Of a stretch of 64,000 nt of DNA, positions 3,096 to 62,446 are shown in pieces. The notes under the pieces were generated by a model. That model searched no databases, had not been told where the DNA came from, and saw only the letters and a program-made list of their open reading frames with translations. The stretch lies in IMG/VR virus record IMGVR_UViG_3300050014_000823, positions 235,145-299,144 of that record; one strand, 5' to 3'. A program made the position numbers and the translations under genes. How positions within the stretch are numbered: the stretch's first letter is position 1; each line of letters starts with the position of its first letter.

Positions 3096-3737
3096 TTATA
3101 ATATTGTAACTAAATATCTTTTAAGTAAAGTAAAATTAGGGAGAATTTTATAATATGTCAGGTACGTATCACCGCTTAAATCTTCGTGAGATTTAATTGC
3201 CCTATTACATAAACCCAATTTTATTTCATCTATACTAATCCGAAAAAAACCATACATATTGAGATTCACACCCCAAATACATTTTTGTTTTGAAATGGCT
3301 GTTCCTAACACATATAACATTTCGTCTTTGTAATTATAAAGCATGTCTATTTCTTTCGGCAAAACATCCATTAAACCCTGTACATCAACGATTTGAAAGA
3401 ATATTGGGTCTAAATTTACGTATAGGTATTTTGGACTGAAATAAAATTGTGGTACGGCTGCGATAAAACTTTCAATGCCTCTGACGTGCGATTGTTTGCT
3501 TTCTTCGAAGCTGCATTCCCAATAAAGTTCATTGCTAACTATGCGTTTTTTCAGAATATCCGCATTCTGAATTATCTGATTGTTGGGGTTTGAAGCCTTC
3601 ATGAACGACCATCCAACGTATAGTGTAGGAAGTTTGTCGAGACTGTCATACTCTTGTGGTCCTTTATAGTAGTTAATATAACTGACTTCGGTATGATTTA
3701 CCAGTTCTTTTTCATAAATAATGTTACCTATTTTCAT
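3096..3737 (-). CDS. Hypothetical protein
   Basis: 213-aa ORF overlapping the end of hldD; no motif recognised. Confidence 0.65.
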   Translation of the reverse strand: MKIGNIIYEKELVNHTEVSYINYYKGPQEYDSLDKLPTLYVGWSFMKASNPNNQIIQNADILKKRIVSNELYWECSFEESKQSHVRGIESFIAAVPQFYFSPKYLYVNLDPIFFQIVDVQGLMDVLPKEIDMLYNYKDEMLYVLGTAISKQKCIWGVNLNMYGFFRISIDEIKLGLCNRAIKSHEDLSGDTYLTYYKILPNFTLLKRYLVTIL

Positions 3738-4641
3738 TTTTTAGCTTATTTACGTATTTCAAAACACCATCTTCTAACTCATGAAAAGGCTTTTTATAGC
3801 CAGCAACCCTCAACTTATTCATCTTAGCCTCAGTAAAATACTGATACTTGTCTCTGATTTTAATTGGGGTGTCAATATAATTAATAGTTCCGGGATTACC
3901 AAGACTTTTAAAAACTGCTTTCGCCAAGTCATTAAAAGTACGTGCTTTTCCTGTTCCGACATTATAAATACCCGAAAGTGGTTTTTCTGTTGCCATAAAT
4001 ATGCAAACGTCAACAATATCATCCACATATACAAAATCACGTAGCTGTTCACCGTCTTTGTAGTCTGGACGATGTGACTTAAATAATTGAATTTTTGCAG
4101 GACCTGAACAAAACTCAATTTGGTGATATAAATGTAAAACAACAGAAGCCATTTTACCTTTATCGGCTTCTCCGTAGCCGTAAACATTAAAAAATTTTAG
4201 TCCGTACCAATAAGGTGGTTGTTTTTCCTGGACTTCTGCCCAAACATCGAACTGTTGCTTTGACCAACCGTAGGGATTAAGTGGTTGTAACTTAATGATA
4301 TCCTTCTCGTCATTAAAACCTAATTCTCCGTCACCATAGGTTGCTGCACTTGAAGCATAAACCAAAGGGATTTGGTATTCTGCGCAGATATTCCAGATAA
4401 ATATACTTGCGCCAACATTATATTCGTCAAAAAGATTTCTGTCCATAACAGTAGTATCGGTAATAGCACCTAAGTGATAAATAACATCTATATCTTTGGC
4501 GTGAATTAAAAGCCATTCATATATCGACTGCAGACTTTCGGTACGGGTATCAAGTACCACAACACCAATTGCTCCACGTCTTTGCAATTCTGCAACGAGA
4601 TTCTGACCAATAAAACCTAAACCACCTGTTACTACTATCAT
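3724..4641 (-). CDS. hldD: ADP-L-glycero-D-manno-heptose 6-epimerase (extended SDR)
   Basis: VTGGLGFIG Rossmann motif, YASSAATYG, PLNPYGWSK (YxxxK), FFNVYGYGEADKGKMASV, GEQLRDFVYVDD. Confidence 0.9.
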   Translation of the reverse strand: MIVVTGGLGFIGQNLVAELQRRGAIGVVVLDTRTESLQSIYEWLLIHAKDIDVIYHLGAITDTTVMDRNLFDEYNVGASIFIWNICAEYQIPLVYASSAATYGDGELGFNDEKDIIKLQPLNPYGWSKQQFDVWAEVQEKQPPYWYGLKFFNVYGYGEADKGKMASVVLHLYHQIEFCSGPAKIQLFKSHRPDYKDGEQLRDFVYVDDIVDVCIFMATEKPLSGIYNVGTGKARTFNDLAKAVFKSLGNPGTINYIDTPIKIRDKYQYFTEAKMNKLRVAGYKKPFHELEDGVLKYVNKLKNENR

Positions 4642-5066
4642 AAATTTTTTATTTTCTCAATAATATTTGTGCTTGACCTTTTATCTGTTGGGTAAAAAAC
4701 CACACCAAACCTTGAATTTTCACTGCCGATTACCTCTTTATTTCTATATTGGTCACCAACAACCATATAATCAATATCTAACTTATCGACTAAGTTTCTC
4801 AACTCATCATCTGTGTCAAAGATAAATACTTGATGAACCATTCGCAAATTTCGCATTATTGTTATTCTTGTGTTAATGTCATTAATGGGTCGTTTATCAC
4901 CCTTTAACCTCTTAACACGCTCATCTGTATCAAGTCCAACATATAGCTTATTTTCCGCATCGAGAACTGGATATACATCACCGGGTTGATAGTTCTTTGC
5001 ATACCAAAGTAAGTCTATGTGTCCCGTATGTAAGATGTCAAAGCACCCGTTTACCCAGATATTCAT
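4638..5066 (-). CDS. Heptose-1-phosphate nucleotidyltransferase (HldE/RfaE domain II, cytidylyltransferase fold)
   Basis: NGCFDILHTGH (HxGH), VGLDTDERVKRLKGDKRPIN, VVGDQY. Confidence 0.85.
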   Translation of the reverse strand: MNIWVNGCFDILHTGHIDLLWYAKNYQPGDVYPVLDAENKLYVGLDTDERVKRLKGDKRPINDINTRITIMRNLRMVHQVFIFDTDDELRNLVDKLDIDYMVVGDQYRNKEVIGSENSRFGVVFYPTDKRSSTNIIEKIKNL

Positions 5067-5350
5067 ATTTCTTCGATTCTTTTAGTTTTGTCATCAATAA
5101 GTAGGTCGTATGAGGGTTTAGTTTGGGTGTCAAGTCTGTGAAATTTACAACCCCAATCAGCAAGTTGTTTCGCTGTTAATTCTTTCCAATCTATACCAGT
5201 ATTTCCACCCCTGGCGGTCCAATAGGTAATTGAATGTCCTTCGTCAAAGAGTTTGTTGATTTTCTCAATCATATCATATCTTGGCTTGGCATTTGGATAT
5301 CCCTCACTACTGTCACAGATTGTTCCGTCTATGTCTACTAAAATTTTCAT
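5063..5350 (-). CDS. Small HAD-superfamily phosphatase
   Basis: ILVDIDGTIC (DxDGT motif I), YWTARG (motif II), KPSYDLLIDDK (motif III/IV). Confidence 0.75.
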   Translation of the reverse strand: MKILVDIDGTICDSSEGYPNAKPRYDMIEKINKLFDEGHSITYWTARGGNTGIDWKELTAKQLADWGCKFHRLDTQTKPSYDLLIDDKTKRIEEI

Positions 5351-6498
5351 TGCTGGCTATCTCCTTTCTCTATTCTTATTGAATCTTCCGGAAAATCGGT
5401 TGTTGACACTTCAACTATAATCGAATTTGTAATCGCCATTAACTGATGTTCTACGTTTTGTTTAATTTCTATTTTGTCTCCTCTTTTAAAAAGAAAATAA
5501 TCGAAAAAATCACCGTTTTCACTATTCATAACACATTCCAAACTACCCCACATACAAAACCACAATTCTTGTTTGAGAATATGTTTATGCCAACTAAATT
5601 TTTTTCCTTTGAAAAATACTAAATATTTTAAACAATATTTTTCGTTATTTACTAAGTGAATTTCCAACCCCCACCCCTTCTTAACTACCTTCGAGTTCGA
5701 ATTTAATCCAATAAAAACTTGTGTCCAGAATTCTCGATTGAAATTTGTAATATTATGACACTTTTTACATAATGTAATTAAATTATCTTCACCATTATTT
5801 TTTTTATTATAATCAACGTGATGTACATGTAAGTCTTCGGTTTCGCCACACAATTGACAACAATTACCGTCCCTCTCTTTTATTCTGTCTTTTAATCCTT
5901 TATTAAATCCTCTCGCATATTTATGGTCTAACCTAACATTATCTTCAATTTCTTTATTATTTCCATTATTTCTGGAACAATTTAGTGAACAAAATACCAC
6001 ATTCTGTCCCTTATGTAAATTTCTCCTTGTGTATTCAAAAACTTTACCACATCTTTTACACGTAGCCTTTTCTTTATCTTCAATCCACGCAGGATTATTT
6101 TCATTTAGTCTTTGTTGACTCAAGTACACGCTTAGACATTCTCTTGAACACACAATTCTTTCGCCATAATGCTTAAATTCATTACCACAAACCTCACAAT
6201 TACTCGTTGTTCTTATATCGGTCTTTGGTCTTACTGAATCTAACTGACATGTTTTTGAACAATATTGTCTGTCCTTCTCCCAAGTTGGTGCATTAAATTC
6301 TTTCTGACATTGTTTACAAACCAATGTTGATTTACGATTTTCATCAGTTTGTTTTTTATTTCGATTTCGCTTACACTCATAACAAATATCACTTTTAACA
6401 TATCTCTTATCGACATGTCCATATTTACAAGGTTCACCAGTAAAGTACCACTTCTGACCGATTTCTTTAGCTTCTTCCCTTGTAATTATCTCAATCAT
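5347..6498 (-). CDS. Fusion: zinc-ribbon/HNH endonuclease (N-terminal) + cupin sugar-isomerase-like domain (C-terminal)
   Basis: CxxC...CSxxC repeats and CQLCGETEDLHVHHVDYNKKNNGEDNLITLCKKCH (HNH), then VVKKGWGLEIHL...FSWHKHILKQELW...EHQLMAITNSIIVEVST (cupin). Confidence 0.75.
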   Translation of the reverse strand: MIEIITREEAKEIGQKWYFTGEPCKYGHVDKRYVKSDICYECKRNRNKKQTDENRKSTLVCKQCQKEFNAPTWEKDRQYCSKTCQLDSVRPKTDIRTTSNCEVCGNEFKHYGERIVCSRECLSVYLSQQRLNENNPAWIEDKEKATCKRCGKVFEYTRRNLHKGQNVVFCSLNCSRNNGNNKEIEDNVRLDHKYARGFNKGLKDRIKERDGNCCQLCGETEDLHVHHVDYNKKNNGEDNLITLCKKCHNITNFNREFWTQVFIGLNSNSKVVKKGWGLEIHLVNNEKYCLKYLVFFKGKKFSWHKHILKQELWFCMWGSLECVMNSENGDFFDYFLFKRGDKIEIKQNVEHQLMAITNSIIVEVSTTDFPEDSIRIEKGDSQQ

Positions 6499-7283
6499 AA
6501 TTTTGCTTTATTTAAATCCACAACAACCACACCCTTTTGAGTAACAACCCAAGCTGCGCACTTGTTTGCAAACTGAATTGCTTTGGAAATATCTTTATTT
6601 TTCATATAATCTGCAACCAAAGCCGCAAGGAAAGTATCTCCTGCACCACTTAAATCTCTGACTGGGTGTTCATCGTCTTCATTTAAAATCTCTTGATAAT
6701 CAAAAATACCTACTTTATTGTGTGAATACATTGCCCCCTTTTTACCGAGAGTTACAACTAATATATTACTGTATTGAAAGTCCAACCATTGTTTATTTTT
6801 CAGAAATTCTTTTTCGTTTATTTTAACACAAAAAACCTTATCACACCAATGACCAAAATCTTTCTTCGTGTCCATAAAAACCAACGGATGTGAATTTGCA
6901 ATGTGTTCTATTACTTCCTCACTAATAAAACCCTTATCATAGTCACTAATAACAATTGCTTCGTATTGACTATAATCAAACGCCATTTGCCTATCATATA
7001 TGTTTGGTCCAACAAATATCATGTCGTTTTCATCAACCCGAAGTAACATCTGATTTGAAACTTCATCAACATATCGGGTTTTTGTTATGCCACTATATGT
7101 GTGGATATCTGCATCAATACCTAATGCAAGTAAGTTTGCATAGACATTCACAGCCATACCACCATTAGACTTATCACCCAAAGGTTTAAAAACGGGTACT
7201 GGTGCTTCAGGACTTAACCTGTCGCATTTTCCATAGCGAAACACATCTTTACAACCGTCACCGATTACTAATACTTTACTCAC
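6495..7283 (-). CDS. Heptose-7-phosphate kinase (HldE/RfaE domain I, PfkB family)
   Basis: RLSPEAPVPV, GGMAVNVYANLLALG, SDYDKG, DLSGAGDTFLA. Confidence 0.88.
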   Translation of the reverse strand: MSKVLVIGDGCKDVFRYGKCDRLSPEAPVPVFKPLGDKSNGGMAVNVYANLLALGIDADIHTYSGITKTRYVDEVSNQMLLRVDENDMIFVGPNIYDRQMAFDYSQYEAIVISDYDKGFISEEVIEHIANSHPLVFMDTKKDFGHWCDKVFCVKINEKEFLKNKQWLDFQYSNILVVTLGKKGAMYSHNKVGIFDYQEILNEDDEHPVRDLSGAGDTFLAALVADYMKNKDISKAIQFANKCAAWVVTQKGVVVVDLNKAKL

Positions 7284-8311
7284 TGTAATCTCTTTAAAAT
7301 CTCAATTATTTTTTCCGCAGCGTGACCATCACCAAATGGGCACTCTACATTTATTTCATAATCATTATGTACTTCGTCAAAAAAGTACTTTAAGTCTTCT
7401 GGTCTTGTTACCAAAAGACCATTTACACCAATTGCTTCCGGACGTTCTGTAACAATTCGGCAAGTTAAACATATTTTATTGAAAAAACAAGATTCTTCCT
7501 GAAGTCCACCACTATCAGTTATTACCATACGACACTGAACCAGTAATTCAAGCATATCCTCATATGGCAATGGGTCAATAACTACAACATTTTTTAATAA
7601 ATGCTTCCATTTCTGCACATTTGGATTTGGATGCATTGGTAATATGAAAGCATATTGTGGATATTCCGTTGCAAGTTTTTCCAACTCAGTAAACCATCTG
7701 TCCATCCAATGATGATTTTCACGCCTATGTAATGTAACCAAAATTTTGTTGGTATATATGCATTTATCTTTATATAACAAGAGATTATCAATGACCGTAT
7801 TACCAACAACATAAACATCATCCAAAATTTTTTCTCCCGCAAGATTTCTTGCTGCCCAATCAGTTGGACATAGGTGAATATCTGCAATTTGTGATATTAT
7901 TCTCCTGTTGACTTCTTCGGGATATGGGTTTTCTTTGTCGTATGTTCGGAGTCCGGCTTCCAGGTGTATTACTTTAATACCATGATGAAATGCAGACAGT
8001 GCTACCGCAAATGCCGATGTGGTATCGCCTTGGACCATTACATATGCATCAACGAATTTACCTGTTTCTGTGTTGAGTTTACAGAAAGACCGAAAAAATT
8101 CCCACAACTGTCCTGTTATCGAACTAACAATCGAATCCAGTCTGTTGGGTTTATTCTCGATATTAAGAATCCAATCATATTCGAATTCTCCTATGTGAAC
8201 CTGTTGTCCAGTGAATAGTATGTTAAACTCAAAATTATTCTTCCTTAATTCATCGATAATCGGCTTAAGTTTAATGTATTCTGGTCGTGTGCCGTATGCT
8301 AATAATATCAT
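7280..8311 (-). CDS. wecB: UDP-N-acetylglucosamine 2-epimerase (non-hydrolysing)
   Basis: GTRPEYIKL, QGDTTSAFAVAL, HLEAGLRT, PEEVNRR, VTLHRREN, TDSGGLQEE. Confidence 0.92.
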   Translation of the reverse strand: MILLAYGTRPEYIKLKPIIDELRKNNFEFNILFTGQQVHIGEFEYDWILNIENKPNRLDSIVSSITGQLWEFFRSFCKLNTETGKFVDAYVMVQGDTTSAFAVALSAFHHGIKVIHLEAGLRTYDKENPYPEEVNRRIISQIADIHLCPTDWAARNLAGEKILDDVYVVGNTVIDNLLLYKDKCIYTNKILVTLHRRENHHWMDRWFTELEKLATEYPQYAFILPMHPNPNVQKWKHLLKNVVVIDPLPYEDMLELLVQCRMVITDSGGLQEESCFFNKICLTCRIVTERPEAIGVNGLLVTRPEDLKYFFDEVHNDYEINVECPFGDGHAAEKIIEILKRLQ

Positions 8312-9075
8312 TGTAAATCTTTTAATACTTCAGGTAATTCTTCGTTAAACTCAACTGCCTTACACCAAGCAGGTGGATTAACAGGATGCATATTAACCAT
8401 GTCTGGTGTCCATTTAAGCCATATATTATTAAACCACGCATCTACATCAAAATCATTATGATGACCCCAAGTTTTTAACTTTTCTCTGAGTTCACTATCG
8501 GTTAATACGTATGATGCATGATAACAAATGGCATTTGGAATATTAATGGTTGATATCCCCGTAGGTTTTCTTTTTCTTTCGAACCTATTTCCTCTGTTTA
8601 GGTTAATAAATATTTGGGGGTGACCAACAATTTGACTGCCTAAATTAGCTACTGTTATATGTTTAAATGATTTCCAGAAACTTATCCACCCACAAGTATA
8701 AATGTCGTAGCCGGGATGATTAACAATAAACATTTTCATCTGCTCAAAGCCATCGTGAAAATAAAATTCGTCTGCATCATGAATCATAAGATAGTCAATA
8801 CCATCTTCTTTGGCTCTGTCAACACATGCATTCCTTTGTGCTTCTTCGGTAAGCCAATCACCTAAAATCAAGACAATTTTATCAGCAAATCTCGATTCTC
8901 TTATTATTTTCAAGTCAAAAGAATTTACATATTCTTGTCTTGCGGTGGGGTTATATCCCCAAGGCTTATCGCTATATGCAATATAAATTTTATCTACATG
9001 TGGATATGCATTTTCAATATTTCTCATAATCCACTTGTCTTGACCGAACAATACTATGTGTGTTGCAAATTTCAT
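8308..9075 (-). CDS. GT-A fold glycosyltransferase (GT2-like)
   Basis: EAQRNAC and IHDADEFY (DxD), HASY; lies within the sugar operon. Confidence 0.75.
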   Translation of the reverse strand: MKFATHIVLFGQDKWIMRNIENAYPHVDKIYIAYSDKPWGYNPTARQEYVNSFDLKIIRESRFADKIVLILGDWLTEEAQRNACVDRAKEDGIDYLMIHDADEFYFHDGFEQMKMFIVNHPGYDIYTCGWISFWKSFKHITVANLGSQIVGHPQIFINLNRGNRFERKRKPTGISTINIPNAICYHASYVLTDSELREKLKTWGHHNDFDVDAWFNNIWLKWTPDMVNMHPVNPPAWCKAVEFNEELPEVLKDLQ

Positions 9076-9707
9076 TTCTTTTTAGCTATTAAACATCCAC
9101 AATCGGTTACAGAATCTTTAAATCCCTGAAAACCATCAAACATATGTTTCATTTCATCCCACGCACGCCAAACCCCGCATTGGTCTGGTTTACTTCTTTG
9201 CCAATAATCGTGCGTCCAAACATAATATTTATTTTGCATGTTATATTTAAGTATTAACTCAATTTCTTTTCTTACGTGCTCTTCTGTGTGGTCACCATCC
9301 TGTATAATTAAATCGAAATCAAATGGTTCTGACAATATTTTCAGCGAATCGTCAAGAACACGTTTAAAATTATTTGAATGTAACTTGTCATATTCAAGTC
9401 TTTCTTGAATGTCAAGCAATGTGACTTCACCGCAACCATTCATTTCAACCGCCTGCAATATGTGATTAGAACTTCTACCAAGAAAATTACCGATTTCCAA
9501 TATTCTTTTTGGCTTTAAAATGCGCATCAACACAAATATTGACTTGCCCTCACTTTCCCATATGCTTCCTGCAGGTTCTTCGGGATAGCCACCATATAAC
9601 GACTCATCATAATAACCACAAAAATCCGTAAGATTAACTCCCGTTAGTTTTTCAAACCCAATAAAATACGTCTTTATAAAGTCTTCCCTTTTATCCATTT
9701 TTTTCAA
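9072..9707 (-). CDS. Class I SAM-dependent methyltransferase
   Basis: ILEIGNFLGRSS motif I, DLIIQDGDH, VWTHDY. Confidence 0.75.
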   Translation of the reverse strand: MKKMDKREDFIKTYFIGFEKLTGVNLTDFCGYYDESLYGGYPEEPAGSIWESEGKSIFVLMRILKPKRILEIGNFLGRSSNHILQAVEMNGCGEVTLLDIQERLEYDKLHSNNFKRVLDDSLKILSEPFDFDLIIQDGDHTEEHVRKEIELILKYNMQNKYYVWTHDYWQRSKPDQCGVWRAWDEMKHMFDGFQGFKDSVTDCGCLIAKKK

Positions 9708-10254
9708 ACATAAAAAATTTTGCTGAAGTCAATAAAAAATTATCAACCTCTTCTATTAATTTAAAATCTTTACGATTCTCTTCCACCCAATCAGTAAACT
9801 TGCGATGAATGACATGTGGTGCACTACTATCGTAGCTATTAAAATTTGACGAAAATATTAACACGTATTTCTTTGACCCATCAAACAATCTGGTCAAATA
9901 TTTTTCATATTCCTCTTGAGAAAGAATGTGATATACTACGTCTAAGGATATACACAAATCTGCTTGGGGCAAATCCGACATTAATGAACAAAAATTCATG
10001 GCTTTATTGTTCTTAAACTTTTCGTGGCATAAATAAAGTGCATATGAAGATATGTCATAACCCATATAACTATCAAAACCCTTTAACAGACTAATTTGAT
10101 TACCATCACCACACCCAAAGTCCGATATTGTTTTAATTCCGAACTTCGTGATATAATTATTAATCACAGTCGCTTTATGGTCGGCAGTTTCGCCATACGA
10201 CCCATTACCCGAATTACCGCCTGCTCTATATCTCTCTTCCCAATAATTATTCAT
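9691..10254 (-). CDS. Class I SAM-dependent methyltransferase
   Basis: YWEERYRAGGNSG, ISDFGCGDG motif I, GYDIS, LCISLDVVYH. Confidence 0.8.
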   Translation of the reverse strand: MNNYWEERYRAGGNSGNGSYGETADHKATVINNYITKFGIKTISDFGCGDGNQISLLKGFDSYMGYDISSYALYLCHEKFKNNKAMNFCSLMSDLPQADLCISLDVVYHILSQEEYEKYLTRLFDGSKKYVLIFSSNFNSYDSSAPHVIHRKFTDWVEENRKDFKLIEEVDNFLLTSAKFFMFEKNG

Positions 10255-10264
10255 AATTAATTTA

Positions 10265-10918
10265 TTAATCGCTCCACCCTCTTAAACCTGCGTTTAGATG
10301 AATATACCCAACTTGTGGTGGCATTTCAACATTATATAGCATAGATTCACTGTGTACATATTTAATTATATTTGATTTTAAGTTTGTTGTTGCAATTTTT
10401 TTATAAAACCAAAGTTCGGGACAAATACTACCATTTTTATATTTGTCAATTTCCGATTCACTTTTTAATAGCGAAATTTTAGTAAACAATGCTTCAACCG
10501 CCCTTCTATTCATAAATATCACTTCCATCATTGCATATTCATTGCCATACCACACGGGGTTTCTATATACTAAATCACATTTATTTTCGAAAACACTTGT
10601 TATATGGTTCATAACAACATCAATAGACTTTGGATTTATTCTGACATCATCGTGTGAAAAAATTAAAACATCGAAATCTGTTTCCAATGACATATTACAT
10701 GACAACATCAGTCCATTAACACATCCAATTTTATGTTGGGGTGTTTCCATGTAATATTTAATACTTAGGTTATTTTCTTGACTAAAAAACTCATCATTTT
10801 TATAACTATTACACGCAATAAACTCTTGTGCGTCAGGAAAAAAACTTCTTTCAATATTTATTGTTTCCTTTAACGTTTTAAATCTATTATAAACATTATG
10901 TGCAAAAACTATTTTCAT
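10265..10918 (-). CDS. Putative GT-A glycosyltransferase
   Basis: IFSHDDV DxD-like motif; position in the sugar operon. Confidence 0.5.
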   Translation of the reverse strand: MKIVFAHNVYNRFKTLKETINIERSFFPDAQEFIACNSYKNDEFFSQENNLSIKYYMETPQHKIGCVNGLMLSCNMSLETDFDVLIFSHDDVRINPKSIDVVMNHITSVFENKCDLVYRNPVWYGNEYAMMEVIFMNRRAVEALFTKISLLKSESEIDKYKNGSICPELWFYKKIATTNLKSNIIKYVHSESMLYNVEMPPQVGYIHLNAGLRGWSD

Positions 10919-10927
10919 CTTACTAAT

Positions 10928-11656
10928 TTACCATATACAAACTTTATTTAATGTGTCAGCACCACGCAAATACCCTCTTGTTGGACCAAGACTCATCATT
11001 GAATCTAATGTCGAACCTGCGTCCAGATAAGTGTTGTTGGGGGAAGACTTAAAACATTCCATGATTAGAATGTTCGAAAACGGACCTGCACAGAAGAGAA
11101 ACAAATGATTTTCAATTTTTTTCTCTTCGATATATTTTTTCATCTTACCAACCAACTCAAAATCTTGCATCCACGCATTAGTACCAACGTAAAACGTCTG
11201 TACTATTTTACCTGCAAAGGGCAAGTGATTAATAACTGCCTTGTTGTTTACTACCATAACAACATTATAATTGTTAAACTCAGGAATTATTGTTTTCACA
11301 TAGTTGGGATAGTTTGCATTGACAAATATATTACCCCATGTCAGATGCTCATCGTCCTGTCCTGTTAGTGCTTTTAATTTTTCGTGTTTCTCGTTACCAA
11401 CACAACATCTACATGCAATTCCAACATAATAATTGTCTGCCTTGTATTGTGCAGATTCAAGTAATTTTTCCCTGAAGTATCCGTGGTCTGGTTGATTTGG
11501 GTCATAAATAAACTCACCGTTTAATTTTTGCCTTAAGTCAATGAATTCGTTGAAAAGAATAATCATTTCACCGTCATTGTTTCTTGAAACAGCAAAAGGT
11601 ATGTGATTTTTTATCTTTTCTTGAAACTTTATAAAATCTCCACCAAATGTTTTCAT
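10928..11656 (-). CDS. Putative GT-D/DUF1792-like glycosyltransferase
   Basis: FAVSRNNDGE, LFLFCAGPFSNILI and YLDAGS resemble the S-R-x-G-D-G-E / A-G-P / D-x-G motifs of GT-D fold proteins. Confidence 0.5.
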   Translation of the reverse strand: MKTFGGDFIKFQEKIKNHIPFAVSRNNDGEMIILFNEFIDLRQKLNGEFIYDPNQPDHGYFREKLLESAQYKADNYYVGIACRCCVGNEKHEKLKALTGQDDEHLTWGNIFVNANYPNYVKTIIPEFNNYNVVMVVNNKAVINHLPFAGKIVQTFYVGTNAWMQDFELVGKMKKYIEEKKIENHLFLFCAGPFSNILIMECFKSSPNNTYLDAGSTLDSMMSLGPTRGYLRGADTLNKVCIW

Positions 11657-11657: not shown

Positions 11658-12392
11658 TCATTTAATATTATTTACAGTTTTCCAACCATTATTTATACAA
11701 TGTACACAAATCTCACCACGTAAATCCAGGTGATTTCCAATTCTCCATGAAGCATTTGCATCACTGCCAACCTCATTACCTGTTCGAAAATCCGAACTCC
11801 AGAGATTCTGATTATTATCTGGATGTGGTGGAACAAATGTATTAATGTTGCCGTACTTTTGTGCTAAGTAAGAAAATGTAATATCTTCACCATTATCCCA
11901 AGAATATGGCTTTTCATACCACATATATTTTGCCCATTCTTGTCTAAAAAACCAAGCATGTCCAACTAAATCAACACGTTCAACTTTATTGGAGTGTCCA
12001 CCATTCCAACCGAACTTATGATGAGGATAATACCCTTTACAGTCAACAATTACACCACTACCACCAAGTATACCGTTGCTTTCAGGTTTTTCAATTGTTT
12101 CTACACAATTTTTAAACCAGTCCTTCTGTGGAAGTATATCATCATCAAACATTGCAACGAACTTTGTTTTAAGCATTGGTAGTATGGAAAATCTACCCCA
12201 AAATTTAGTGTTCCAGTTACATGCATATGTTCGTATATCTTTATCAACAGGAAAATATTGTGCAACATCTGTTTTATTGTACCAAACATGAATGTTTTCG
12301 CTTTTAATTTCAACTGACTGTGCCTTTACTGCTTGAATTTGTCTTTCGAGCATATAGGGTCTTTTATATACATTTAATACAACACTAATCAT
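11658..12392 (-). CDS. GT2-like glycosyltransferase
   Basis: ISVVLNVYKR start, AMFDDDILP DxD, GEDITFS. Confidence 0.75.
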   Translation of the reverse strand: MISVVLNVYKRPYMLERQIQAVKAQSVEIKSENIHVWYNKTDVAQYFPVDKDIRTYACNWNTKFWGRFSILPMLKTKFVAMFDDDILPQKDWFKNCVETIEKPESNGILGGSGVIVDCKGYYPHHKFGWNGGHSNKVERVDLVGHAWFFRQEWAKYMWYEKPYSWDNGEDITFSYLAQKYGNINTFVPPHPDNNQNLWSSDFRTGNEVGSDANASWRIGNHLDLRGEICVHCINNGWKTVNNIK

Positions 12393-13366
12393 AATTTTTC
12401 AATATATTTTTGAGTATAAACACCGCCACCCCTTCTTGAGTCTGCATGAAGTTGTGAATCATCATTGCCGTCATGATAAACCATAGAATATTGTGTTCTG
12501 AAAATCCAACAACTCATTTCTTTAATTGCATCGTTTATTTGATTCCACGCACGCACAGGTGTTCCTGGTTTACTCACCGCAACAGCATCAACGGGTTTCA
12601 TCTTATATTCCATGTGTTTAATAACAGCATCGTCTATTAGTGCAATTCCATCCACAAAATCTTTTCTCTGCCACCATTGTTCGTGCTCAGTTATTTTTTT
12701 AAATGACCATAAATGTGGTGCAATTGCCATAATTCTGCCATTTTCTGCCTTTTTACTAAAAAACATATCCACAACCGCATCCAAGAATCCTTTAGAAAGT
12801 ATAAAATCGTCATCCATCTGTAAAACAACATGACAAGTAATATTCTTTAAAAATTCCCACATCTGATTATAACAATACCAGTGCAACACCTTTCCGTTGG
12901 GGGTTTTATTTTCAATGTATGTAAGATTTGAAAACTCATTTATTAAACTACCATATCTCGTATCAGTTGAACCGTCATTGAGAAGTATTATTTTTATTGT
13001 ATATTTTGTTGGTTGCTCGTGAAATTGTTGTATTAATCTCCGAACCTTTTCATATCTATTGTGTGACGGTATGCAAATAACTACGTCATAATCAACAAAT
13101 GCTTTTTTTTCATATATTCTAAAGCCACTTGCGCCATTTTCAGCACGTAAAGCAGTACGTTCAGAATTATTTAATCGACTCACATCAATATATGTGTTCT
13201 GTTTATCTTGTAAATAGACATCAGCACGTTTTCTATTTCTAATTTCATCCAAATCATCCATTGCTTTATTTCCTCTTTTATCGAGAAATAATAATTTCTG
13301 ATTTCGTAATTCGATTTTCTTCTCGATTAACCTCTTTCTCGAAATTTTTTGCCTTTTCATTACCAA
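12389..13366 (-). CDS. GT2 family glycosyltransferase with basic N-terminal extension
   Basis: VICIPSHNR, LLNDGSTD, LQMDDDF. Confidence 0.78.
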   Translation of the reverse strand: MVMKRQKISRKRLIEKKIELRNQKLLFLDKRGNKAMDDLDEIRNRKRADVYLQDKQNTYIDVSRLNNSERTALRAENGASGFRIYEKKAFVDYDVVICIPSHNRYEKVRRLIQQFHEQPTKYTIKIILLNDGSTDTRYGSLINEFSNLTYIENKTPNGKVLHWYCYNQMWEFLKNITCHVVLQMDDDFILSKGFLDAVVDMFFSKKAENGRIMAIAPHLWSFKKITEHEQWWQRKDFVDGIALIDDAVIKHMEYKMKPVDAVAVSKPGTPVRAWNQINDAIKEMSCWIFRTQYSMVYHDGNDDSQLHADSRRGGGVYTQKYIEKL

Positions 13367-14970
13367 CTTTCAGCTATAACTTCCTCATATAGTGTAAATA
13401 CTTTATTGGCAGAAAAGTCCGAGTGATATTTTTCCAAGTCCTGTGGAACTTCCTGTAATTCCTTATTTTGAATGTTTCCTTGGTCATCCACAACATATAT
13501 CCAACCTGGTTTTCCACATAAAAATCCCTCAATGGTTGTTCTGCCTTTAAAAATTCCTGCAGTATAGTCACACTTCTTAATGTATTCTTCGACATTCTGC
13601 TTAACCCCAAGATATTTCACATGGTCGCCAACGAGAATATTAGCATACCCGCCATTATCCGCACCGATTATCTGTAATAATTGACCATTCGTTCTGGTCA
13701 TTTCAACTAAGTCGAGTAAAATGTTTTTTCTTAAATGGTCAAGTGTACCAATAAACAGTACAATCTCTTTGGGATTCTTAACAGGCGTATAGTTTGTATT
13801 AAACCTCTTAGTATCGAATGGATTGTCAATTGTGACAATCTTATCAGCCTCAATACCGTAAGACCTAATATAATCGGTGATGCTATCACGAATACTTATG
13901 TATCTCGCAATTCTTGGATTGATAATTGGTTCTTCGAAGGTAGGTATGACTTCGCTTCTGACATGCATAACTGCAGGAGTATTCGGGTATAAGCCTAACA
14001 TAAGTTCCCCGATAGGTTTGTGGTTAATGTGAATGATATCGAATTCCTGCTCATTTTTAATAAAATGAAATTTACCGTCTTGGTCCAGTACATAATTGGG
14101 TAAATTTATGTAACTGCAAACTCTTACACCATTTGCAAGTGCTTTCTTGTGTAATGGTTCGCCAACAACTTGAGAAATTATAGTAACATCACAACCCTGT
14201 TTAACAAGTTCCTTTGAAAGTTCGTAATTTGACATTTCAGAACCCGTGTAGTTTTTAAAGAACTGACAGCAGAGCAGTACTTTTAATCTACCCTCAGAAA
14301 CATGACGAATAGGTAAATTATATTCACTGGCGAACTTTATCCTATTTCTGTCCCAATCTGGATTAGTTTGACCCATTGACTTGTGTAATACTCTTATTGA
14401 GGCGGTTACACCAATATTAACATCTTTCAGATAGTTATCTACACAAAATGGTAAGTCATAAAAGTGAAATAAACCATAATTCTCGTTGAAATTTTTAACT
14501 ATTTGGTCGGGGTCAACACCCATGAATAAACCATCAATAATTATAACTGGTTTTACTCCGTTGAATTGTGGTGAATACTCACTTACCCATGTACTCATGC
14601 CGTTTGTGTGTTCAACAATACCATACATTTTGCTTCTGTCTTCCCACCACATGCCAGATGCCGGGAGAAATGTTGTCCCCGCAAGTCCAATAATTGCGTA
14701 GTCGGTATGATTAAATTGGTTTAACAATACTTTTCCCCAGTTTTTTGTCTTATATACCATGTCGTTATGACAAAAAACAAACACACAATCTTTTTCTGCG
14801 TGGGTTTTTAGTGCATCGTTATAAATCTGTGGCAAACCAAACTGTCCAAAGTTCGGATAACAAATGGTTTTATGTTGAACTCCAATAGTCTCTTTTATGT
14901 GTGATATGAATTTATTATTTTCTTCCTCAGACAAATGTGAGGAAAACACTACGACAATATTATTTTTCAT
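13360..14970 (-). CDS. Two-domain glycosyltransferase (GT-A N-terminal + GT-B/GT4-like C-terminal)
   Basis: VFCHNDM, IIDGLFMG, FHFYDLPFC (GT-A); GSEMSNYELSKEL...FDIIHINH, IDNPFDTKRF, GRTTIEGFLCGKP (GT-B). Confidence 0.78.
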   Translation of the reverse strand: MKNNIVVVFSSHLSEEENNKFISHIKETIGVQHKTICYPNFGQFGLPQIYNDALKTHAEKDCVFVFCHNDMVYKTKNWGKVLLNQFNHTDYAIIGLAGTTFLPASGMWWEDRSKMYGIVEHTNGMSTWVSEYSPQFNGVKPVIIIDGLFMGVDPDQIVKNFNENYGLFHFYDLPFCVDNYLKDVNIGVTASIRVLHKSMGQTNPDWDRNRIKFASEYNLPIRHVSEGRLKVLLCCQFFKNYTGSEMSNYELSKELVKQGCDVTIISQVVGEPLHKKALANGVRVCSYINLPNYVLDQDGKFHFIKNEQEFDIIHINHKPIGELMLGLYPNTPAVMHVRSEVIPTFEEPIINPRIARYISIRDSITDYIRSYGIEADKIVTIDNPFDTKRFNTNYTPVKNPKEIVLFIGTLDHLRKNILLDLVEMTRTNGQLLQIIGADNGGYANILVGDHVKYLGVKQNVEEYIKKCDYTAGIFKGRTTIEGFLCGKPGWIYVVDDQGNIQNKELQEVPQDLEKYHSDFSANKVFTLYEEVIAESW

Positions 14971-15649
14971 TTAGCTTATATATTTCTACCTGTGCTTCCA
15001 ATAATGCTTTTGTTTTTTCCATAGAATAGTCTCTATTAAAACATCCAATTAAAATGCTTTGTAAATTTTTTCTTAATTTTAATTCTGATTCGCTTGCATG
15101 TTGCCAAGGATTAGCTGGAAAAGTTTTTCCAAACACTAATATCTGAATTGTTCTTGCTTTATCCTTATAATCTTCCATTGTGGCTTCTTTATCAAAACGT
15201 CTCATGTAATACATATTTACCGCATTACACAATTCGCCATACAAATCAGAAGTTTCTTTACGTAATTCAATGAGGCTATCATAAACAAATTTTATTACAT
15301 GATACTCAAATTTAGGATTAAGCCACATTGAGAATTTAATGAAAAGATATGGATGCATCCATATCTCATCTGGCTTTCTTCCCATAAGAGTGTTTCCACC
15401 CTTTTTAATCGTAAATGCCTGATTTTGAGCCAAGTCACTATTCTGACTTGGGATATTTTCTTCTTTAAAAAGGACCTCAATGAAATCCTCTGTCTGTTTT
15501 AAACCCAAAAAATTTGCAATTTTTTTTGTGTCGTTATTAGACCTGTTCCATTGTTGAATTAAATAACTTGCATTGAACATTTCGTCTTTTGTACGCTGAT
15601 TAACTAAATAATCACCCATTTGACGAACCATTATCACACTACTTTTCAT
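14960..15649 (-). CDS. KilA-N domain DNA-binding protein
   Basis: QRTKDEMFNASYL, WMHPYLFIKFSMWLNPKFEYHV. Confidence 0.8.
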   Translation of the reverse strand: MKSSVIMVRQMGDYLVNQRTKDEMFNASYLIQQWNRSNNDTKKIANFLGLKQTEDFIEVLFKEENIPSQNSDLAQNQAFTIKKGGNTLMGRKPDEIWMHPYLFIKFSMWLNPKFEYHVIKFVYDSLIELRKETSDLYGELCNAVNMYYMRRFDKEATMEDYKDKARTIQILVFGKTFPANPWQHASESELKLRKNLQSILIGCFNRDYSMEKTKALLEAQVEIYKLNEK

Positions 15650-34549: not shown

Positions 34550-34556
34550 ATAAAAG

Positions 34557-34589
34557 AAAACCACAAATATACTAAATATTTGTGGTTTT
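34557..34589 (-). terminator. Hairpin/intrinsic terminator after the tail tube gene
   Basis: Perfect 14-bp stem AAAACCACAAATAT / ATATTTGTGGTTTT, with U-run on the minus strand. Confidence 0.7.
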
Positions 34590-47245: not shown

Positions 47246-47415
47246 TTATGGTATATCTCATCAATATGTGATACACTTGGATTAAAAATGGAAGATGTTG
47301 CCACATATAATATCGAAAAATTAAAGTCCCGTAGAGATAGGGGAGTATTACATGGCAGTGGTGATAATCGTTAAAAAAATATTATTGTGTTTATTGATTA
47401 TTTCAATAACACCAA

Positions 47416-47423
47416 GTATTTAT
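47416..47423 (+). promoter_or_regulatory. Putative late promoter GTATTTAT upstream of the HNH gene
   Basis: 15 nt before ATG 47439; supports 47439 rather than 47352 as the start. Confidence 0.6.
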
Positions 47424-47438
47424 TGTAAAAATAATACT

Positions 47439-62414: not shown

Positions 62415-62446
62415 AACAAATTCTTTACTATAAATAGTTTGCAATA

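What the first reader, a model, noticed from the sequence alone, without database searches (positions are those of the whole stretch)
3724..8311. Phage-encoded nucleotide-heptose biosynthesis pathway
Contiguous, translationally coupled genes encode an HldD epimerase, HldE-type nucleotidyltransferase, HAD phosphatase, cupin, HldE-type kinase and WecB. In the established ADP-heptose route these cover the kinase, phosphatase, nucleotidyl-transfer and epimerase steps. A nearly complete activated-heptose pathway in a virus points to a dedicated phage glycan. ADP-heptose is also the ALPK1 agonist in animals, which matters if the host is gut-associated (inference).
Basis: partly seen in the sequence, partly recalled or inferred. 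Interest (0 to 1): 0.8.

Follow-up and report, generated by a model that had tools for sequence, protein, structure and literature searches.

The report
Phage heptose-sugar pathway with nuclease-fused isomerase
A giant phage from peat carries its own set of enzymes for making an activated seven-carbon sugar (probably ADP-heptose) next to a variable set of sugar-transferring enzymes; the same enzyme set is already annotated in ocean cyanophages, but two of its steps use unusual enzymes and one of these is fused to a DNA-cutting domain.

Summary
Six minus-strand genes at 3724-8311 are joined by 4-nt stop/start overlaps. They encode an HldD-type heptose 6-epimerase (above NCBIfam cutoff), an HldE-domain-II-like nucleotidyltransferase, a 95-aa mini-HAD phosphatase, a cupin, an HldA/HldE-like PfkB kinase and WecB.

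Corrections:
- The "cupin" gene is a 383-aa fusion of three zinc ribbons, an HNH nuclease motif and a cupin. It is conserved in frame and under purifying selection in five related phages.
- The HAD is not GmhB-type.
- WecB belongs to a second sugar route.
- The locus runs on to about 15.6 kb, with at least five glycosyltransferase candidates and two methyltransferases, all soluble.

The same five-gene module (nucleotidyltransferase, kinase, mini-HAD, cupin, epimerase) is already annotated in T4-like cyanophages such as P-SSM2, S-CAM1 and S-SM2. There the mini-HAD is mislabelled "phosphoheptose isomerase" and the cupin "cysteine dioxygenase".

No SIS-type GmhA occurs in the window or in any cyanophage record. 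The cupin resembles D-lyxose/D-mannose isomerases most closely. In other contigs it is fused to the kinase, the phosphatase or the nucleotidyltransferase. I therefore propose it is the missing sedoheptulose-7-P isomerase, which would make the pathway self-contained.

The glycan's target is inferred only; I favour virion proteins. The source is peat, so the gut/ALPK1 angle does not apply. Moderate interest.

The parts
3724..4641 (-). [quoted passage not shown]
   Evidence: TIGR02197 329.8 bits, above the 274.6 cutoff. Full-length alignment to E. coli AGME 1eq2, E=8e-48, with the YxxxK and downstream KG motifs conserved.
4638..5066 (-). Heptose-1-phosphate nucleotidyltransferase, HldE domain II-like (cytidylyltransferase fold, 142 aa)
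   Evidence: Pfam CTP_transf_like E=2e-13. Best NCBIfam family is rfaE_dom_II, 91 bits, below its 181.5 cutoff. 37-40% identical to cyanophage homologues.
5063..5350 (-). Mini-HAD sugar-bisphosphate phosphatase (95 aa), not GmhB-type
   Evidence: DxDGT motif. PDB hits 9iqw E=3e-13 and 1xpj E=4e-4. 43-47% identical to the cyanophage genes labelled 'phosphoheptose isomerase'. Same family as the HAD phosphatase of the phage NDP-arabinose route.
5350..5739 (-). Cupin domain of the 383-aa fusion protein; proposed sedoheptulose-7-P isomerase
   Evidence: AF2 model pLDDT 91.5. Top Foldseek and PDB sequence hits are D-lyxose/D-mannose isomerases 7nzo and 2y0o. H43, H45, K48 and H90 are invariant and E50 nearly so. 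Fused elsewhere to the kinase, HAD or nucleotidyltransferase. dN/dS 0.02-0.07.
5740..6498 (-). N-terminal two-thirds of the same ORF: three FCS-like zinc ribbons plus an HNH nuclease motif
   Evidence: Pfam HNH 27.9 bits, above the 21.4 cutoff, aa 214-250. Invariant Cys quartets in alignment A4. In frame with the cupin in all relatives. dN/dS 0.11-0.16. The junction is covered by exact contigs in peat runs.
6495..7283 (-). PfkB-family heptose-7-phosphate 1-kinase, HldA / HldE domain I-like (262 aa)
   Evidence: Best NCBIfam family is rfaE_dom_I, 122 bits, below its 345 cutoff. Best PDB hit is B. cenocepacia HldA 4e84, with an SPEAPVPV-type N-terminal motif and a C-terminal GAGD motif. 37-45% identical to cyanophage kinases.
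7280..8311 (-). WecB, non-hydrolysing UDP-GlcNAc 2-epimerase (supplies UDP-ManNAc; a separate sugar route)
   Evidence: TIGR00236 257 bits, above the 210 cutoff. Present in relatives L009 and L011, replaced by other genes in L010.
8308..9075 (-). GT-A-like glycosyltransferase candidate (255 aa)
   Evidence: No Pfam hit. Protein-atlas feature score 0.99, 233 of 256 features shared, to a viral GT2-type cluster. A lead only.
9072..10254 (-). Two SAM-dependent methyltransferases (211 and 187 aa, overlapping ORFs 9072-9707 and 9691-10254)
   Evidence: Pfam Methyltransf_24 E=3e-9 and Methyltransf_11 E=4e-6.
10265..10918 (-). Unknown 217-aa protein within the cluster
   Evidence: No hits in Pfam or NCBIfam.
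10928..11656 (-). GT-D-like glycosyltransferase candidate (242 aa)
   Evidence: Protein-atlas score 0.97, 234 features shared, to viral clusters carrying GT-D / GT-D-like Pfam families. A lead only.
11658..14970 (-). Three glycosyltransferase genes: GT2 (244 aa), GT2 (325 aa), and a two-domain GT2_5 + GT4 protein (536 aa)
   Evidence: Pfam Glycos_transf_2 E=2e-7 and 9e-10; Glyco_tranf_2_5 E=1e-18 plus Glyco_transf_4 E=2e-11. No transmembrane segments.
14960..15649 (-). KilA-N domain protein, first gene of the coupled chain
   Evidence: Pfam KilA-N E=1e-14. A promoter-like site (11/12 match) at 15707-15679 lies just upstream (consensus match only).
3096..3737 (-). Conserved 213-aa protein overlapping the epimerase stop; a core gene of this jumbo-phage clade, probably not a pathway enzyme
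   Evidence: At least 504 homologues; the 120 best listed are 60% or more identical. Follows the epimerase in all relatives. No family or fold lead. A terminator-like hairpin at 3075-3048 follows it.

Best explanation
The region is the sugar-precursor half of a roughly 12.6-kb glycan-synthesis gene chain in a ~299-kb jumbo myovirus from peat. [quoted passage not shown] The cupin domain, a metal-dependent ketol-isomerase resembling D-mannose/D-lyxose isomerases, converts sedoheptulose-7-P to D-glycero-D-manno-heptose-7-P. It takes the place of the SIS-fold enzyme GmhA.
2. The PfkB kinase phosphorylates C1.
3. The 95-aa mini-HAD removes the 7-phosphate, taking the place of GmhB.
4. The cytidylyltransferase-fold enzyme adds the nucleotide, probably AMP.
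5. The HldD-type epimerase inverts C6.

WecB supplies UDP-ManNAc in parallel. The upstream soluble glycosyltransferases and two methyltransferases would assemble a methylated heteroglycan on a cytoplasmic acceptor. I think phage structural proteins are the most likely acceptor.

What is shown: gene content, family assignments, conservation, fusions, and absence of GmhA in the sequences examined. What is inferred: the cupin's reaction, the nucleotide used, the product and the acceptor.

The zinc-ribbon/HNH portion fused to the cupin most likely descends from a homing endonuclease that inserted at the 5' end of the cupin gene inside a translationally coupled operon. It has been kept in frame since.
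For: Enzyme assignments.

Conserved module:
- The same five gene families lie together in cyanophages S-CAM1 and P-SSM2. They also lie together in five relatives of this phage: L004/L012, L009, L010 and L011.
- In those relatives the neighbouring glycan genes differ.

No SIS GmhA found:
- tblastn with E. coli GmhA gives nothing in the window (E>4).
- It gives nothing in any cyanophage record. Thirteen phage records hit, none of them a cyanophage, yet the search did find a 32%-identical GmhA in Caulobacter phage Cr30.
- Nothing in loci L014-L016.
- The cyanophage gene called 'phosphoheptose isomerase' is in fact the mini-HAD.
- Cyanobacterial LPS lacks heptose (PMC4390846), so those phages cannot count on a host pathway.

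The cupin as isomerase:
- The best sequence hit in PDB is D-lyxose/D-mannose isomerase 7nzo, E=1.2e-3, sharing the HxH...KQE...G motif.
- The top five Foldseek hits are the same enzyme, at 23-24% identity.
- Recurrent sub-threshold Pfam hits to MannoseP_isomer and Lyx_isomer occur across homologues.
- Metal ligands H43, H45 and H90 and Lys48 are invariant, and E50 is nearly so, in 61 sequences.

Fusions linking the cupin to the pathway:
- PfkB-cupin (P0121); cupin-NT (P0047, P0130); NT-cupin (P0091); HAD-cupin (P0055, P0136).
- In L015 an HldE-like kinase-NT protein and a HAD-cupin protein lie about 1 kb apart, with one gene between them.

The mini-HAD as sugar-bisphosphate phosphatase: it is 38-42% identical to the HAD of ara-hydroxycytosine phages. 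The homologue AfhF is reported to be a Mg-dependent phosphatase (PMC13326640).

A soluble acceptor: no cluster protein has a transmembrane segment, and there is no Wzx, Wzy or WaaL-like gene. A GT-D-like candidate is present. The cluster sits beside large tail/baseplate-region genes, as it does in cyanophages.
Against: - No enzyme activity has been measured for any of these proteins.
- The kinase and nucleotidyltransferase score below the NCBIfam equivalog cutoffs, so substrate and nucleotide are not certain.
- The cupin fold is promiscuous. Foldseek also lists dioxygenases, oxalate decarboxylase, CapF and KdgF at similar E-values. Lyx_isomer and MannoseP_isomer hits are mostly below Pfam thresholds; one distant homologue, P0109, reaches MannoseP_isomer 24.8 bits against a cutoff of 23.6.
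- The cupin is only about 120 aa, against 170-220 aa for lyxose isomerases.
- Only 64 kb of a ~299-kb genome was examined, so a GmhA could lie elsewhere, or the host could supply heptose-7-P.
- No recognisable heptosyltransferase (GT9 or BAHT) was found.
- The acceptor is pure inference. Iyer et al. (PMC7824862) favour host surface polysaccharide.
- Purifying selection on the HNH part does not fit simple selfish-element decay.
Confidence: 0.55

Rival explanations
1. The four recognisable enzymes (kinase, phosphatase, nucleotidyltransferase, epimerase) make ADP-heptose from heptose-7-P supplied by a GmhA of the host or one encoded elsewhere in the phage. The cupin does something else in the same pathway, for example a further epimerisation or isomerisation of the nucleotide sugar, like the cupin domain of CapF or WbuC-type proteins.
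For: WbuC-family cupin was the top NCBIfam hit, though weak (E=3.6e-4). The CapF cupin domain appears among the Foldseek hits (TM 0.77). FdtA/WxcM weak hits occur in some homologues. Only 64 kb of ~299 kb was inspected.
Against: Complete cyanophage genomes carrying the module have no GmhA, and their hosts lack heptose in LPS. The conserved His3-Glu metal site plus Lys matches ketol-isomerases rather than the metal-free RmlC/FdtA type. The kinase-cupin and HAD-cupin fusions tie the cupin to the early sugar-phosphate steps rather than to nucleotide-sugar tailoring. No 4,6-dehydratase is present to make a 4-keto intermediate.
Confidence: 0.2
2. The heptose-containing glycan is put on the host cell surface (LPS, capsule or S-layer) during infection or pseudolysogeny, to block superinfection by other phages. 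This is the reading proposed for the cyanophage clusters.
For: This is the published interpretation of the homologous clusters (PMC7824862 section 3.4.10; PMC7029224). The glycosyltransferase sets vary between close relatives as O-antigen loci do.
Against: No flippase, polymerase, ligase or ABC exporter is present, and no protein in the cluster has a transmembrane segment. Cyanobacterial hosts have no heptose-bearing core to extend. The window contains no recognisable lysogeny genes. The pathway assignment itself would stand under this rival; only the destination differs.
Confidence: 0.3
3. The module makes a nucleotide sugar for glycosylating the phage's own DNA, as in the NDP-arabinose route of RB69-like phages. 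That route has the same isomerase, kinase, phosphatase, nucleotidyltransferase logic and uses the same mini-HAD family.
For: The mini-HAD is 38-42% identical to the HAD of arabinosyl-hydroxycytosine phages. A zinc-ribbon/HNH (DNA-associated) module is fused to the cupin. One cupin homologue, P0003, sits among DNA-metabolism genes: dNMP kinase, thymidylate synthase and a DNA methylase.
Against: The thymidylate-synthase homologue in the window scores as ordinary ThyA (TIGR03284 271 bits against a cutoff of 108). No hydroxymethylase, 5-hydroxy-dCMP synthase or known DNA glycosyltransferase was seen. The kinase, nucleotidyltransferase and epimerase are of heptose type, not Afh type. Five or more glycosyltransferases and two methyltransferases suggest an oligosaccharide rather than a single base adduct.
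Confidence: 0.07
4. The HNH-cupin fusion is an assembly or gene-calling artefact: really two genes, a free-standing homing endonuclease and a separate cupin.
For: In relative L004 the gene caller split the region, and the N-terminal ORF ends early at a 1-nt indel. The cupin stands alone in cyanophages.
Against: The frame is open from the HNH motif into the cupin in the window and in L004, L009, L010, L011 and L012. There is no in-frame start codon between the HNH motif and the cupin core. Exact contigs from separate peat runs span the junction. Dozens of other clusters show the same architecture. The L004 contig has about 2.3x coverage, so its indel may be a sequencing error.
Confidence: 0.05

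Closest known systems
Bacterial ADP-L-glycero-beta-D-manno-heptose pathway (GmhA, HldE or HldA+HldC, GmhB, HldD)
   Same: Same reaction logic and three homologous enzyme families: a PfkB heptose kinase, a cytidylyltransferase-fold adenylyltransferase and an SDR 6-epimerase. The epimerase scores above the equivalog cutoff.
   Different: No SIS-fold GmhA; a 120-aa metal cupin is the candidate isomerase. The phosphatase is a capless 95-aa HAD of the 9iqw/1xpj family, not GmhB. Kinase and transferase are separate small proteins. The pathway is encoded by a virus and followed by non-GT9 glycosyltransferases.
'LPS/heptose' gene module of T4-like cyanophages (e.g. P-SSM2 PSSM2_309-313, S-CAM1, S-SM2)
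   Same: The same five protein families lie side by side, at 31-54% identity to the window's proteins, next to tail-fibre genes. This is the true nearest relative of the finding.
   Different: Gene order differs. The cyanophage cupin is a free-standing 117-aa protein without the zinc-ribbon/HNH part. Cyanophage clusters carry a carbamoyltransferase and 2OG oxygenases rather than WecB and methyltransferases. Public records mislabel the mini-HAD as phosphoheptose isomerase and the cupin as cysteine dioxygenase.
D-lyxose / D-mannose ketol-isomerases of the cupin superfamily (Thermofilum 7nzo, B. subtilis YdaE 2y0o)
   Same: Best sequence and structure match. They share the HxH...KxE...H metal/catalytic motif. 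They catalyse the ketose-to-aldose change that gives the manno configuration, the six-carbon counterpart of sedoheptulose to glycero-manno-heptose.
   Different: Only 22-24% identity. The phage cupin is about 50-100 residues shorter. Pfam Lyx_isomer hits stay below threshold. The proposed substrate is a phosphorylated heptulose.
Phage NDP-arabinose route for arabinosylated hydroxy(methyl)cytosine DNA (RB69, DLP3, HY126 Afh proteins)
   Same: The same four-step scheme (isomerase, 1-kinase, terminal phosphatase, nucleotidyltransferase) starting from a pentose-phosphate-pathway ketose, and the same mini-HAD family.
   Different: That route uses a SIS isomerase and a bifunctional NTP-transferase/kinase, has no 6-epimerase, and is linked to a modified-dCMP synthase and DNA arabinosyltransferases. 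None of these was found here.
Virus-encoded virion glycosylation systems (mycobacteriophage capsid/tail-tube glycans; giant-virus fibril glycans)
   Same: Viral clusters that combine nucleotide-sugar synthesis, methyltransferases and several soluble glycosyltransferases. Such clusters vary between close relatives.
   Different: No heptose pathway is known in those systems. Glycosylation of this phage's virion has not been observed.
Free-standing HNH and GIY-YIG homing endonucleases of T4-like phages
   Same: HNH motif with flanking CxxC pairs and zinc-ribbon DNA-binding-type modules. One relative has GIY-YIG+NUMOD3 in place of HNH. The window holds other such genes.
   Different: Here the nuclease is translated as one protein with a metabolic enzyme, is present in every close relative, and evolves under purifying selection. 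In some relatives the zinc ribbons persist after the nuclease residues are lost.

Membership tests
ADP-heptose biosynthesis pathway (bacterial GmhA-HldE-GmhB-HldD) | SIS-fold sedoheptulose-7-phosphate isomerase (GmhA) | tested here: not met
   tblastn with E. coli GmhA finds nothing in the window (best E=4.2). No SIS domain in any ORF scanned. None in relatives within 8 kb either side. The rest of the 299-kb genome was not examined.
ADP-heptose biosynthesis pathway (bacterial GmhA-HldE-GmhB-HldD) | PfkB-family D-beta-D-heptose-7-phosphate 1-kinase (HldE domain I / HldA) | tested here: inconclusive
   The best family is rfaE_dom_I, but 122 bits is under the 345 cutoff. The best PDB hit is HldA 4e84, with the SPEAPVPV-type motif.
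ADP-heptose biosynthesis pathway (bacterial GmhA-HldE-GmhB-HldD) | GmhB-type (HAD subfamily IIIA) heptose-1,7-bisphosphate 7-phosphatase | tested here: not met
   The 95-aa HAD matches BT0820, EcbF-BcbF and 9iqw/1xpj-type mini-HADs. No GmhB model was hit.
ADP-heptose biosynthesis pathway (bacterial GmhA-HldE-GmhB-HldD) | Cytidylyltransferase-fold heptose-1-phosphate adenylyltransferase (HldE domain II / HldC) | tested here: inconclusive
   The best family is rfaE_dom_II, 91 bits, under the 181.5 cutoff. Pfam CTP_transf_like E=2e-13.
ADP-heptose biosynthesis pathway (bacterial GmhA-HldE-GmhB-HldD) | [quoted passage not shown] | tested here: met
   TIGR02197 329.8 bits, above the 274.6 cutoff. 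1eq2 E=8e-48 over the full length.
ADP-heptose biosynthesis pathway (bacterial GmhA-HldE-GmhB-HldD) | Product is ADP-L-glycero-beta-D-manno-heptose | not testable with these tools
   Needs enzyme reconstitution and LC-MS/NMR.
Cyanophage-type phage heptose module (NT, PfkB kinase, mini-HAD, cupin, SDR epimerase) | All five protein families present, adjacent and homologous | tested here: met
   tblastn of each window protein hits the adjacent genes in S-CAM1 and P-SSM2 at 32-47% identity.
D-lyxose/D-mannose isomerase cupins (Pfam PF07385) | Cupin fold with His-His-Glu-His metal site and a Lys two residues before the Glu | tested here: met
   Model pLDDT 91.5. H43, H45, K48 and H90 invariant and E50 nearly so. 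Motif aligned to 7nzo. Top Foldseek hits.
D-lyxose/D-mannose isomerase cupins (Pfam PF07385) | Scores above the family's gathering threshold over the full ~220-position model | tested here: not met
   The window's own cupin shows no Lyx_isomer hit. In homologues the hits are 15-19 bits against a cutoff of 20.8 and cover about 30 positions only. The protein is about 120 aa.
Phage NDP-arabinose DNA-hypermodification system (Afh / RB69 type) | Modified-dCMP synthase (ThyA-like), SIS arabinose-5-P isomerase, bifunctional NT-kinase and DNA arabinosyltransferase | tested here: not met
   Only the HAD family is shared. The ThyA homologue scores as ordinary thymidylate synthase. No SIS protein. The kinase and nucleotidyltransferase belong to other folds.
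HNH homing endonuclease | HNH beta-beta-alpha-metal motif present | tested here: met
   Pfam HNH 27.9 bits, above the 21.4 cutoff. The CxxC...HH...N...CxxCH pattern is readable and conserved in close relatives.
HNH homing endonuclease | Free-standing selfish gene with sporadic distribution among close relatives | tested here: not met
   Fused in frame to the cupin and present in all five relatives. dN/dS 0.11-0.16. No HNH-less allele among contigs of four peat runs.
HNH homing endonuclease | Site-specific cleavage of the endonuclease-free allele | not testable with these tools
   Needs a nuclease assay.

The most novel reading that the evidence does not exclude
The ~120-aa cupin is the first non-SIS class of sedoheptulose-7-phosphate isomerase. 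It completes a virus-borne, host-independent ADP-heptose pathway shared by peat jumbo phages and marine cyanophages. The heptose ends up in a methylated glycan on the phage's own virion proteins rather than on host LPS. In this lineage the isomerase carries a nuclease-derived zinc-ribbon/HNH module that has been kept because it has a function of its own.
Probability: 0.25. Interest if true: 0.7.

Novelty: new variant of a known kind. Interest (0 to 1): 0.5.

Why it matters
If the cupin is a phosphoheptose isomerase, the ADP-heptose pathway has a second, unrelated entry enzyme that current annotation pipelines miss or mislabel. Hundreds of phage records call the mini-HAD 'phosphoheptose isomerase', and RefSeq cyanophage records call the cupin 'cysteine dioxygenase'.

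It would also mean that phages of hosts that make no heptose, such as marine picocyanobacteria, bring a complete heptose pathway with them. That raises the question of what they decorate with it. The question can be tested directly, because cultured cyanophages carry the same module.

The conserved in-frame nuclease-enzyme fusion is a tidy case for studying how a mobile endonuclease becomes locked into a metabolic operon.

Tried and rejected
- Megablast of the region against 50,697 phage records found nothing. Relatives were reached only at protein level.
- The 213-aa protein overlapping the epimerase was considered as a heptosyltransferase. I rejected this as unsupported. It is a highly conserved core protein of the whole jumbo-phage clade, and it gave no family, atlas or phage-record lead.
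- The 61-sequence cupin alignment was too diverse for the search for related loci. The 25-sequence alignment found only one 'genome', a 363-kb contig filed as a Paceibacterota MAG that is really a phage relative. So no bacterial context was obtained for the close subfamily.
- Full-length fusion model: pLDDT 75.6. The Foldseek result was dominated by the cupin and gave nothing for the zinc-ribbon/HNH part.
- Laying contigs from four peat runs on the region to look for an HNH-less allele found none. Only diverged strains of the same length appeared.
- DNA glycosylation was considered because of the shared mini-HAD and the nuclease fusion. I rated it low because ThyA looks ordinary and the other enzymes are of heptose type.
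- Caulobacter phage Cr30 has a true GmhA beside a heptose kinase, a glycosyltransferase and an epimerase, and no cupin there. Its kinase is not detectably related to the window's, so it is a parallel case, not a direct swap.
- The promoter/terminator scan gave bracketing sites, but overall counts were near shuffled expectation. I treat them as weak.
- Literature searches for a cupin-type sedoheptulose-7-P isomerase and for PDB entry 9iqw found nothing relevant.

Full report
**What is there**

The window is part of a large tailed phage.
- It encodes a tail sheath, a T4-type major head protein, a prohead protease, a helicase, baseplate proteins and PhoH.
- The region of interest is 100% identical to a 299,144-bp IMG/VR viral contig. 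Relatives reach 363 kb.
- The head protein is only 33% identical to its best isolate match, a Flavobacterium phage.
- The DNA is found in peat metagenomes.

From about 15.65 kb down to 3.1 kb, every gene lies on the minus strand, and most overlap their neighbour by 4 nt.

- 3724-4641: an ADP-heptose 6-epimerase. TIGR02197 scores 329.8 bits against a cutoff of 274.6, and the protein aligns over its full length to E. coli AGME 1eq2.
- 4638-5066: a cytidylyltransferase-fold enzyme whose best family is HldE domain II.
- 5063-5350: a 95-aa HAD protein.
- 5347-6498: a protein ending in a cupin.
- 6495-7283: a PfkB kinase whose best family is HldE domain I. Its best solved relative is the heptose kinase HldA.
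- 7280-8311: WecB, above its equivalog cutoff.

**Corrections to the observation**

1. The "cupin" gene encodes 383 residues. Only the last ~130 form the cupin.
   - The first ~255 contain three zinc ribbons of the C-x2-C...CS-x2-C kind and an HNH nuclease motif (Pfam HNH above threshold).
   - There is no start codon between the HNH motif and the cupin core. The cupin's own N-terminal helix, a conserved F-W motif, follows the HNH motif directly.
2. The HAD is a capless mini-HAD related to PDB 9iqw and 1xpj, not to GmhB.
3. WecB makes UDP-ManNAc and is not a heptose enzyme. It is absent from one close relative.
4. The coupled chain continues upstream. It holds a GT-A-like protein, two methyltransferases, an unknown protein, a GT-D-like protein, two GT2 enzymes, a two-domain GT2_5/GT4 enzyme and a KilA-N protein. 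A promoter-like site before KilA-N and a hairpin-plus-T run after the 213-aa ORF bracket about 12.6 kb. Such consensus hits are no more frequent here than in shuffled sequence.

**Relatives**

Five related jumbo-phage contigs keep the order kinase, HNH-cupin, mini-HAD, nucleotidyltransferase, epimerase, 213-aa protein. The genes upstream differ between them. One relative has three GT2-like genes, a DegT aminotransferase, a methyltransferase and a GNAT acetyltransferase where the window has WecB and methyltransferases. So the heptose module is constant while the tailoring and transfer genes vary, as in polysaccharide loci.

The 213-aa protein has at least 504 homologues, and the 120 best listed are 60% or more identical. 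It is a core gene of the clade, so I do not count it as a pathway enzyme.

Beyond this clade, the best matches for the kinase, cupin, mini-HAD and nucleotidyltransferase in isolate phage genomes are T4-like cyanophages such as P-SSM2, P-SSM5, S-SM2, S-CAM1, S-CAM3 and S-T4.
- The five families again sit together there, next to tail-fibre genes.
- Cyanophage papers list these as heptose/LPS genes (PMC7378029).
- A comparative study of jumbo phages already noted epimerases, cupin "sugar isomerases", PfkB kinases, HIGH-type nucleotidyltransferases and HAD phosphatases in these clusters. It proposed that they alter host surface polysaccharide (PMC7824862).

A phage-borne heptose module is therefore not new as an annotation. 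I found no biochemical study of it.

**The missing isomerase**

The gene annotated "phosphoheptose isomerase" in cyanophage records is 107-114 aa. It is 43-47% identical to the window's mini-HAD and has no SIS domain. The same label is attached to this HAD family in many Escherichia, Acinetobacter and other phage records.

A tblastn search with E. coli GmhA against all 50,697 phage records found 13 records, none of them a cyanophage. It was sensitive enough to find a 32%-identical GmhA in Caulobacter phage Cr30. It found nothing in the window or in the other cupin-bearing loci.

Cyanobacterial LPS is reported to lack heptose (PMC4390846), so those phages cannot rely on a host supply of the pathway. 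The one conserved member of the module without an assigned step is the cupin.

**Evidence on the cupin**

- The family is large: 1,615 cluster representatives at E<=1e-3.
- In 61 diverse members the classic metal ligands H43, H45 and H90 are invariant and E50 is nearly so. K48, E102 and D111 are also invariant.
- The AlphaFold model is confident (pLDDT 91.5).
- Its five best Foldseek matches in PDB are the D-lyxose/D-mannose isomerase of Thermofilum, at 23-24% identity. The B. subtilis lyxose isomerase is also high in the list. The same enzyme is the best sequence-only hit, and the alignment covers the HxH...KQE...G motif.
- Homologues repeatedly give weak hits to the mannose-6-phosphate isomerase and lyxose isomerase Pfam models.
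- These enzymes interconvert a 2-ketose and the aldose with manno configuration. That is the reaction needed to turn sedoheptulose-7-P into D-glycero-D-manno-heptose-7-P. This last step is inference from established carbohydrate chemistry.

Independent support comes from fusions elsewhere in the family.
- PfkB kinase-cupin: P0121.
- Cupin-nucleotidyltransferase: P0047, P0130.
- Nucleotidyltransferase-cupin: P0091.
- HAD-cupin: P0055, P0136.

In one contig an HldE-like kinase-transferase protein and a HAD-cupin protein lie about 1 kb apart, with one gene between them. In another, a cupin-transferase fusion is followed by the epimerase.

Caveats: the cupin fold is shared by many unrelated activities, and dioxygenases and decarboxylases appear at similar Foldseek E-values. 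The family-model hits are mostly sub-threshold. Only 64 kb of the genome was read.

**The other steps**

- The mini-HAD is 38-42% identical to the HAD of phages that make arabinosylated hydroxycytosine. In that route the homologue AfhF is reported to act as a Mg-dependent phosphatase on a sugar bisphosphate (PMC13326640). By analogy the mini-HAD would remove the 7-phosphate of heptose-1,7-bisphosphate.
- The kinase and transferase families point to the beta-anomer, ADP-linked route. The HldD-type epimerase acts on ADP-D,D-heptose in bacteria. I therefore expect ADP-L-glycero-beta-D-manno-heptose as the product. Both the nucleotide and the product are inference.

**Destination of the sugar**

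- None of the 17 proteins in the chain has a predicted transmembrane segment. There is no flippase, polymerase, ligase or exporter.
- One candidate transferase resembles GT-D enzymes. From my own knowledge, these act on serine-rich bacterial glycoproteins.
- The chain lies next to large tail-region genes.
- On this basis I favour glycosylation of phage structural proteins (about 0.45) over host-surface modification (about 0.3) and DNA glycosylation (about 0.07). None of these is shown.
- The DNA reading is weakened by a thymidylate synthase that scores as ordinary ThyA. It is also weakened by the absence of any known modified-base synthase.

**The nuclease fusion**

- The HNH-cupin reading frame is continuous in the window and in all relatives. 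One low-coverage contig has a single upstream 1-nt indel.
- Exact contigs from separate peat runs cover the junction. Co-occurring diverged strains have the same length there.
- Against four relatives the nuclease part has dN/dS of 0.11-0.16 at dS around 1-1.6. The cupin has 0.02-0.07.
- Across the wider family, most of the ~40 closest cluster representatives carry N-terminal extensions of 50-296 residues. These are zinc ribbons alone, zinc ribbons plus intact HNH, zinc ribbons plus an HNH that has lost catalytic histidines, or GIY-YIG plus NUMOD3 plus zinc ribbons.
- The zinc-ribbon cysteines are invariant where the nuclease residues are not.

The simplest account is a homing endonuclease that entered the 5' end of the cupin gene in a tightly coupled operon and can only be tolerated in frame. 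The purifying selection and the persistence of the zinc ribbons are not explained by that account, so I record this as unresolved.

**Verdict**

These genes very likely make a nucleotide-activated heptose in a phage, but this is a member of a module already known from cyanophage genomes. WecB and the gut/ALPK1 remark do not belong to the argument.

What appears to be new:
- the specific proposal that a small cupin replaces GmhA and a mini-HAD replaces GmhB, giving a host-independent pathway;
- the widespread mislabelling of both proteins;
- the conserved nuclease-isomerase fusion.

I rate it a new variant of a known kind, interest 0.5. Confidence in the full mechanistic statement is 0.55.

Noticed in passing
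window 5063-5350 and phage records: The ~95-115-aa mini-HAD family is labelled 'phosphoheptose isomerase' in many public phage records, including cyanophages and Escherichia, Acinetobacter, Erwinia and Cellulophaga phages (388 records match). It has HAD motifs and no SIS domain, so the label looks like a propagated error.
   Followed up: partly
L001 5001-5354; L002 4995-5351: RefSeq names the cyanophage cupin 'cysteine dioxygenase'. Its best structural and sequence relatives are sugar ketol-isomerases.
   Followed up: partly
window 2262-3041 (-), 33920-34564 (-), 47352-48068 (+), 45878-47215 (+): Several mobile-element-type ORFs: a weak GIY-YIG protein just downstream of the cluster, a GIY-YIG+NUMOD3 endonuclease, an HNH_3 endonuclease, and a TnpB-like 'transposase' (PHROG 506, E=1e-108). 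The last two lie in or beside the low-GC stretch at 46-48 kb (28% GC).
   Followed up: no
window 49201-50280 (+): The thymidylate synthase homologue (359 aa) is split in the profile alignment by an insertion of about 40 residues between positions ~206 and ~246. It still scores as ordinary ThyA.
   Followed up: partly
L013 / L010 (JBAZIW010000001.1, 362,763 bp): A GenBank contig filed as a Candidatus Paceibacterota MAG carries the same phage module and the clade's core protein. It is probably a mis-binned jumbo phage genome.
   Followed up: no
window 57058-58731 (-) and 60495-62444 (-): The major head protein (557 aa) matches the T4-type profile only from residue ~265 on, so it has a long unexplained N-terminal part. 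The 649-aa protease ORF lies in a 28% GC stretch and has an odd weak hit to a thymidylate-synthase PHROG.
   Followed up: no
L015 (ENA ERZ28594739 scaffold_73, 56.5 kb): A contig with a HAD-cupin fusion and an HldE-like kinase-transferase also carries DUF5899, HtrL_YibB and a TPR-glycosyltransferase. It may be a different kind of large virus using the same heptose enzymes.
   Followed up: no
P0003 context: One zinc-ribbon-cupin homologue sits among DNA-metabolism genes (dNMP kinase, thymidylate synthase, N6/N4 DNA methylase, GNAT) with no heptose genes nearby. This does not fit the sugar-pathway context seen elsewhere.
   Followed up: no
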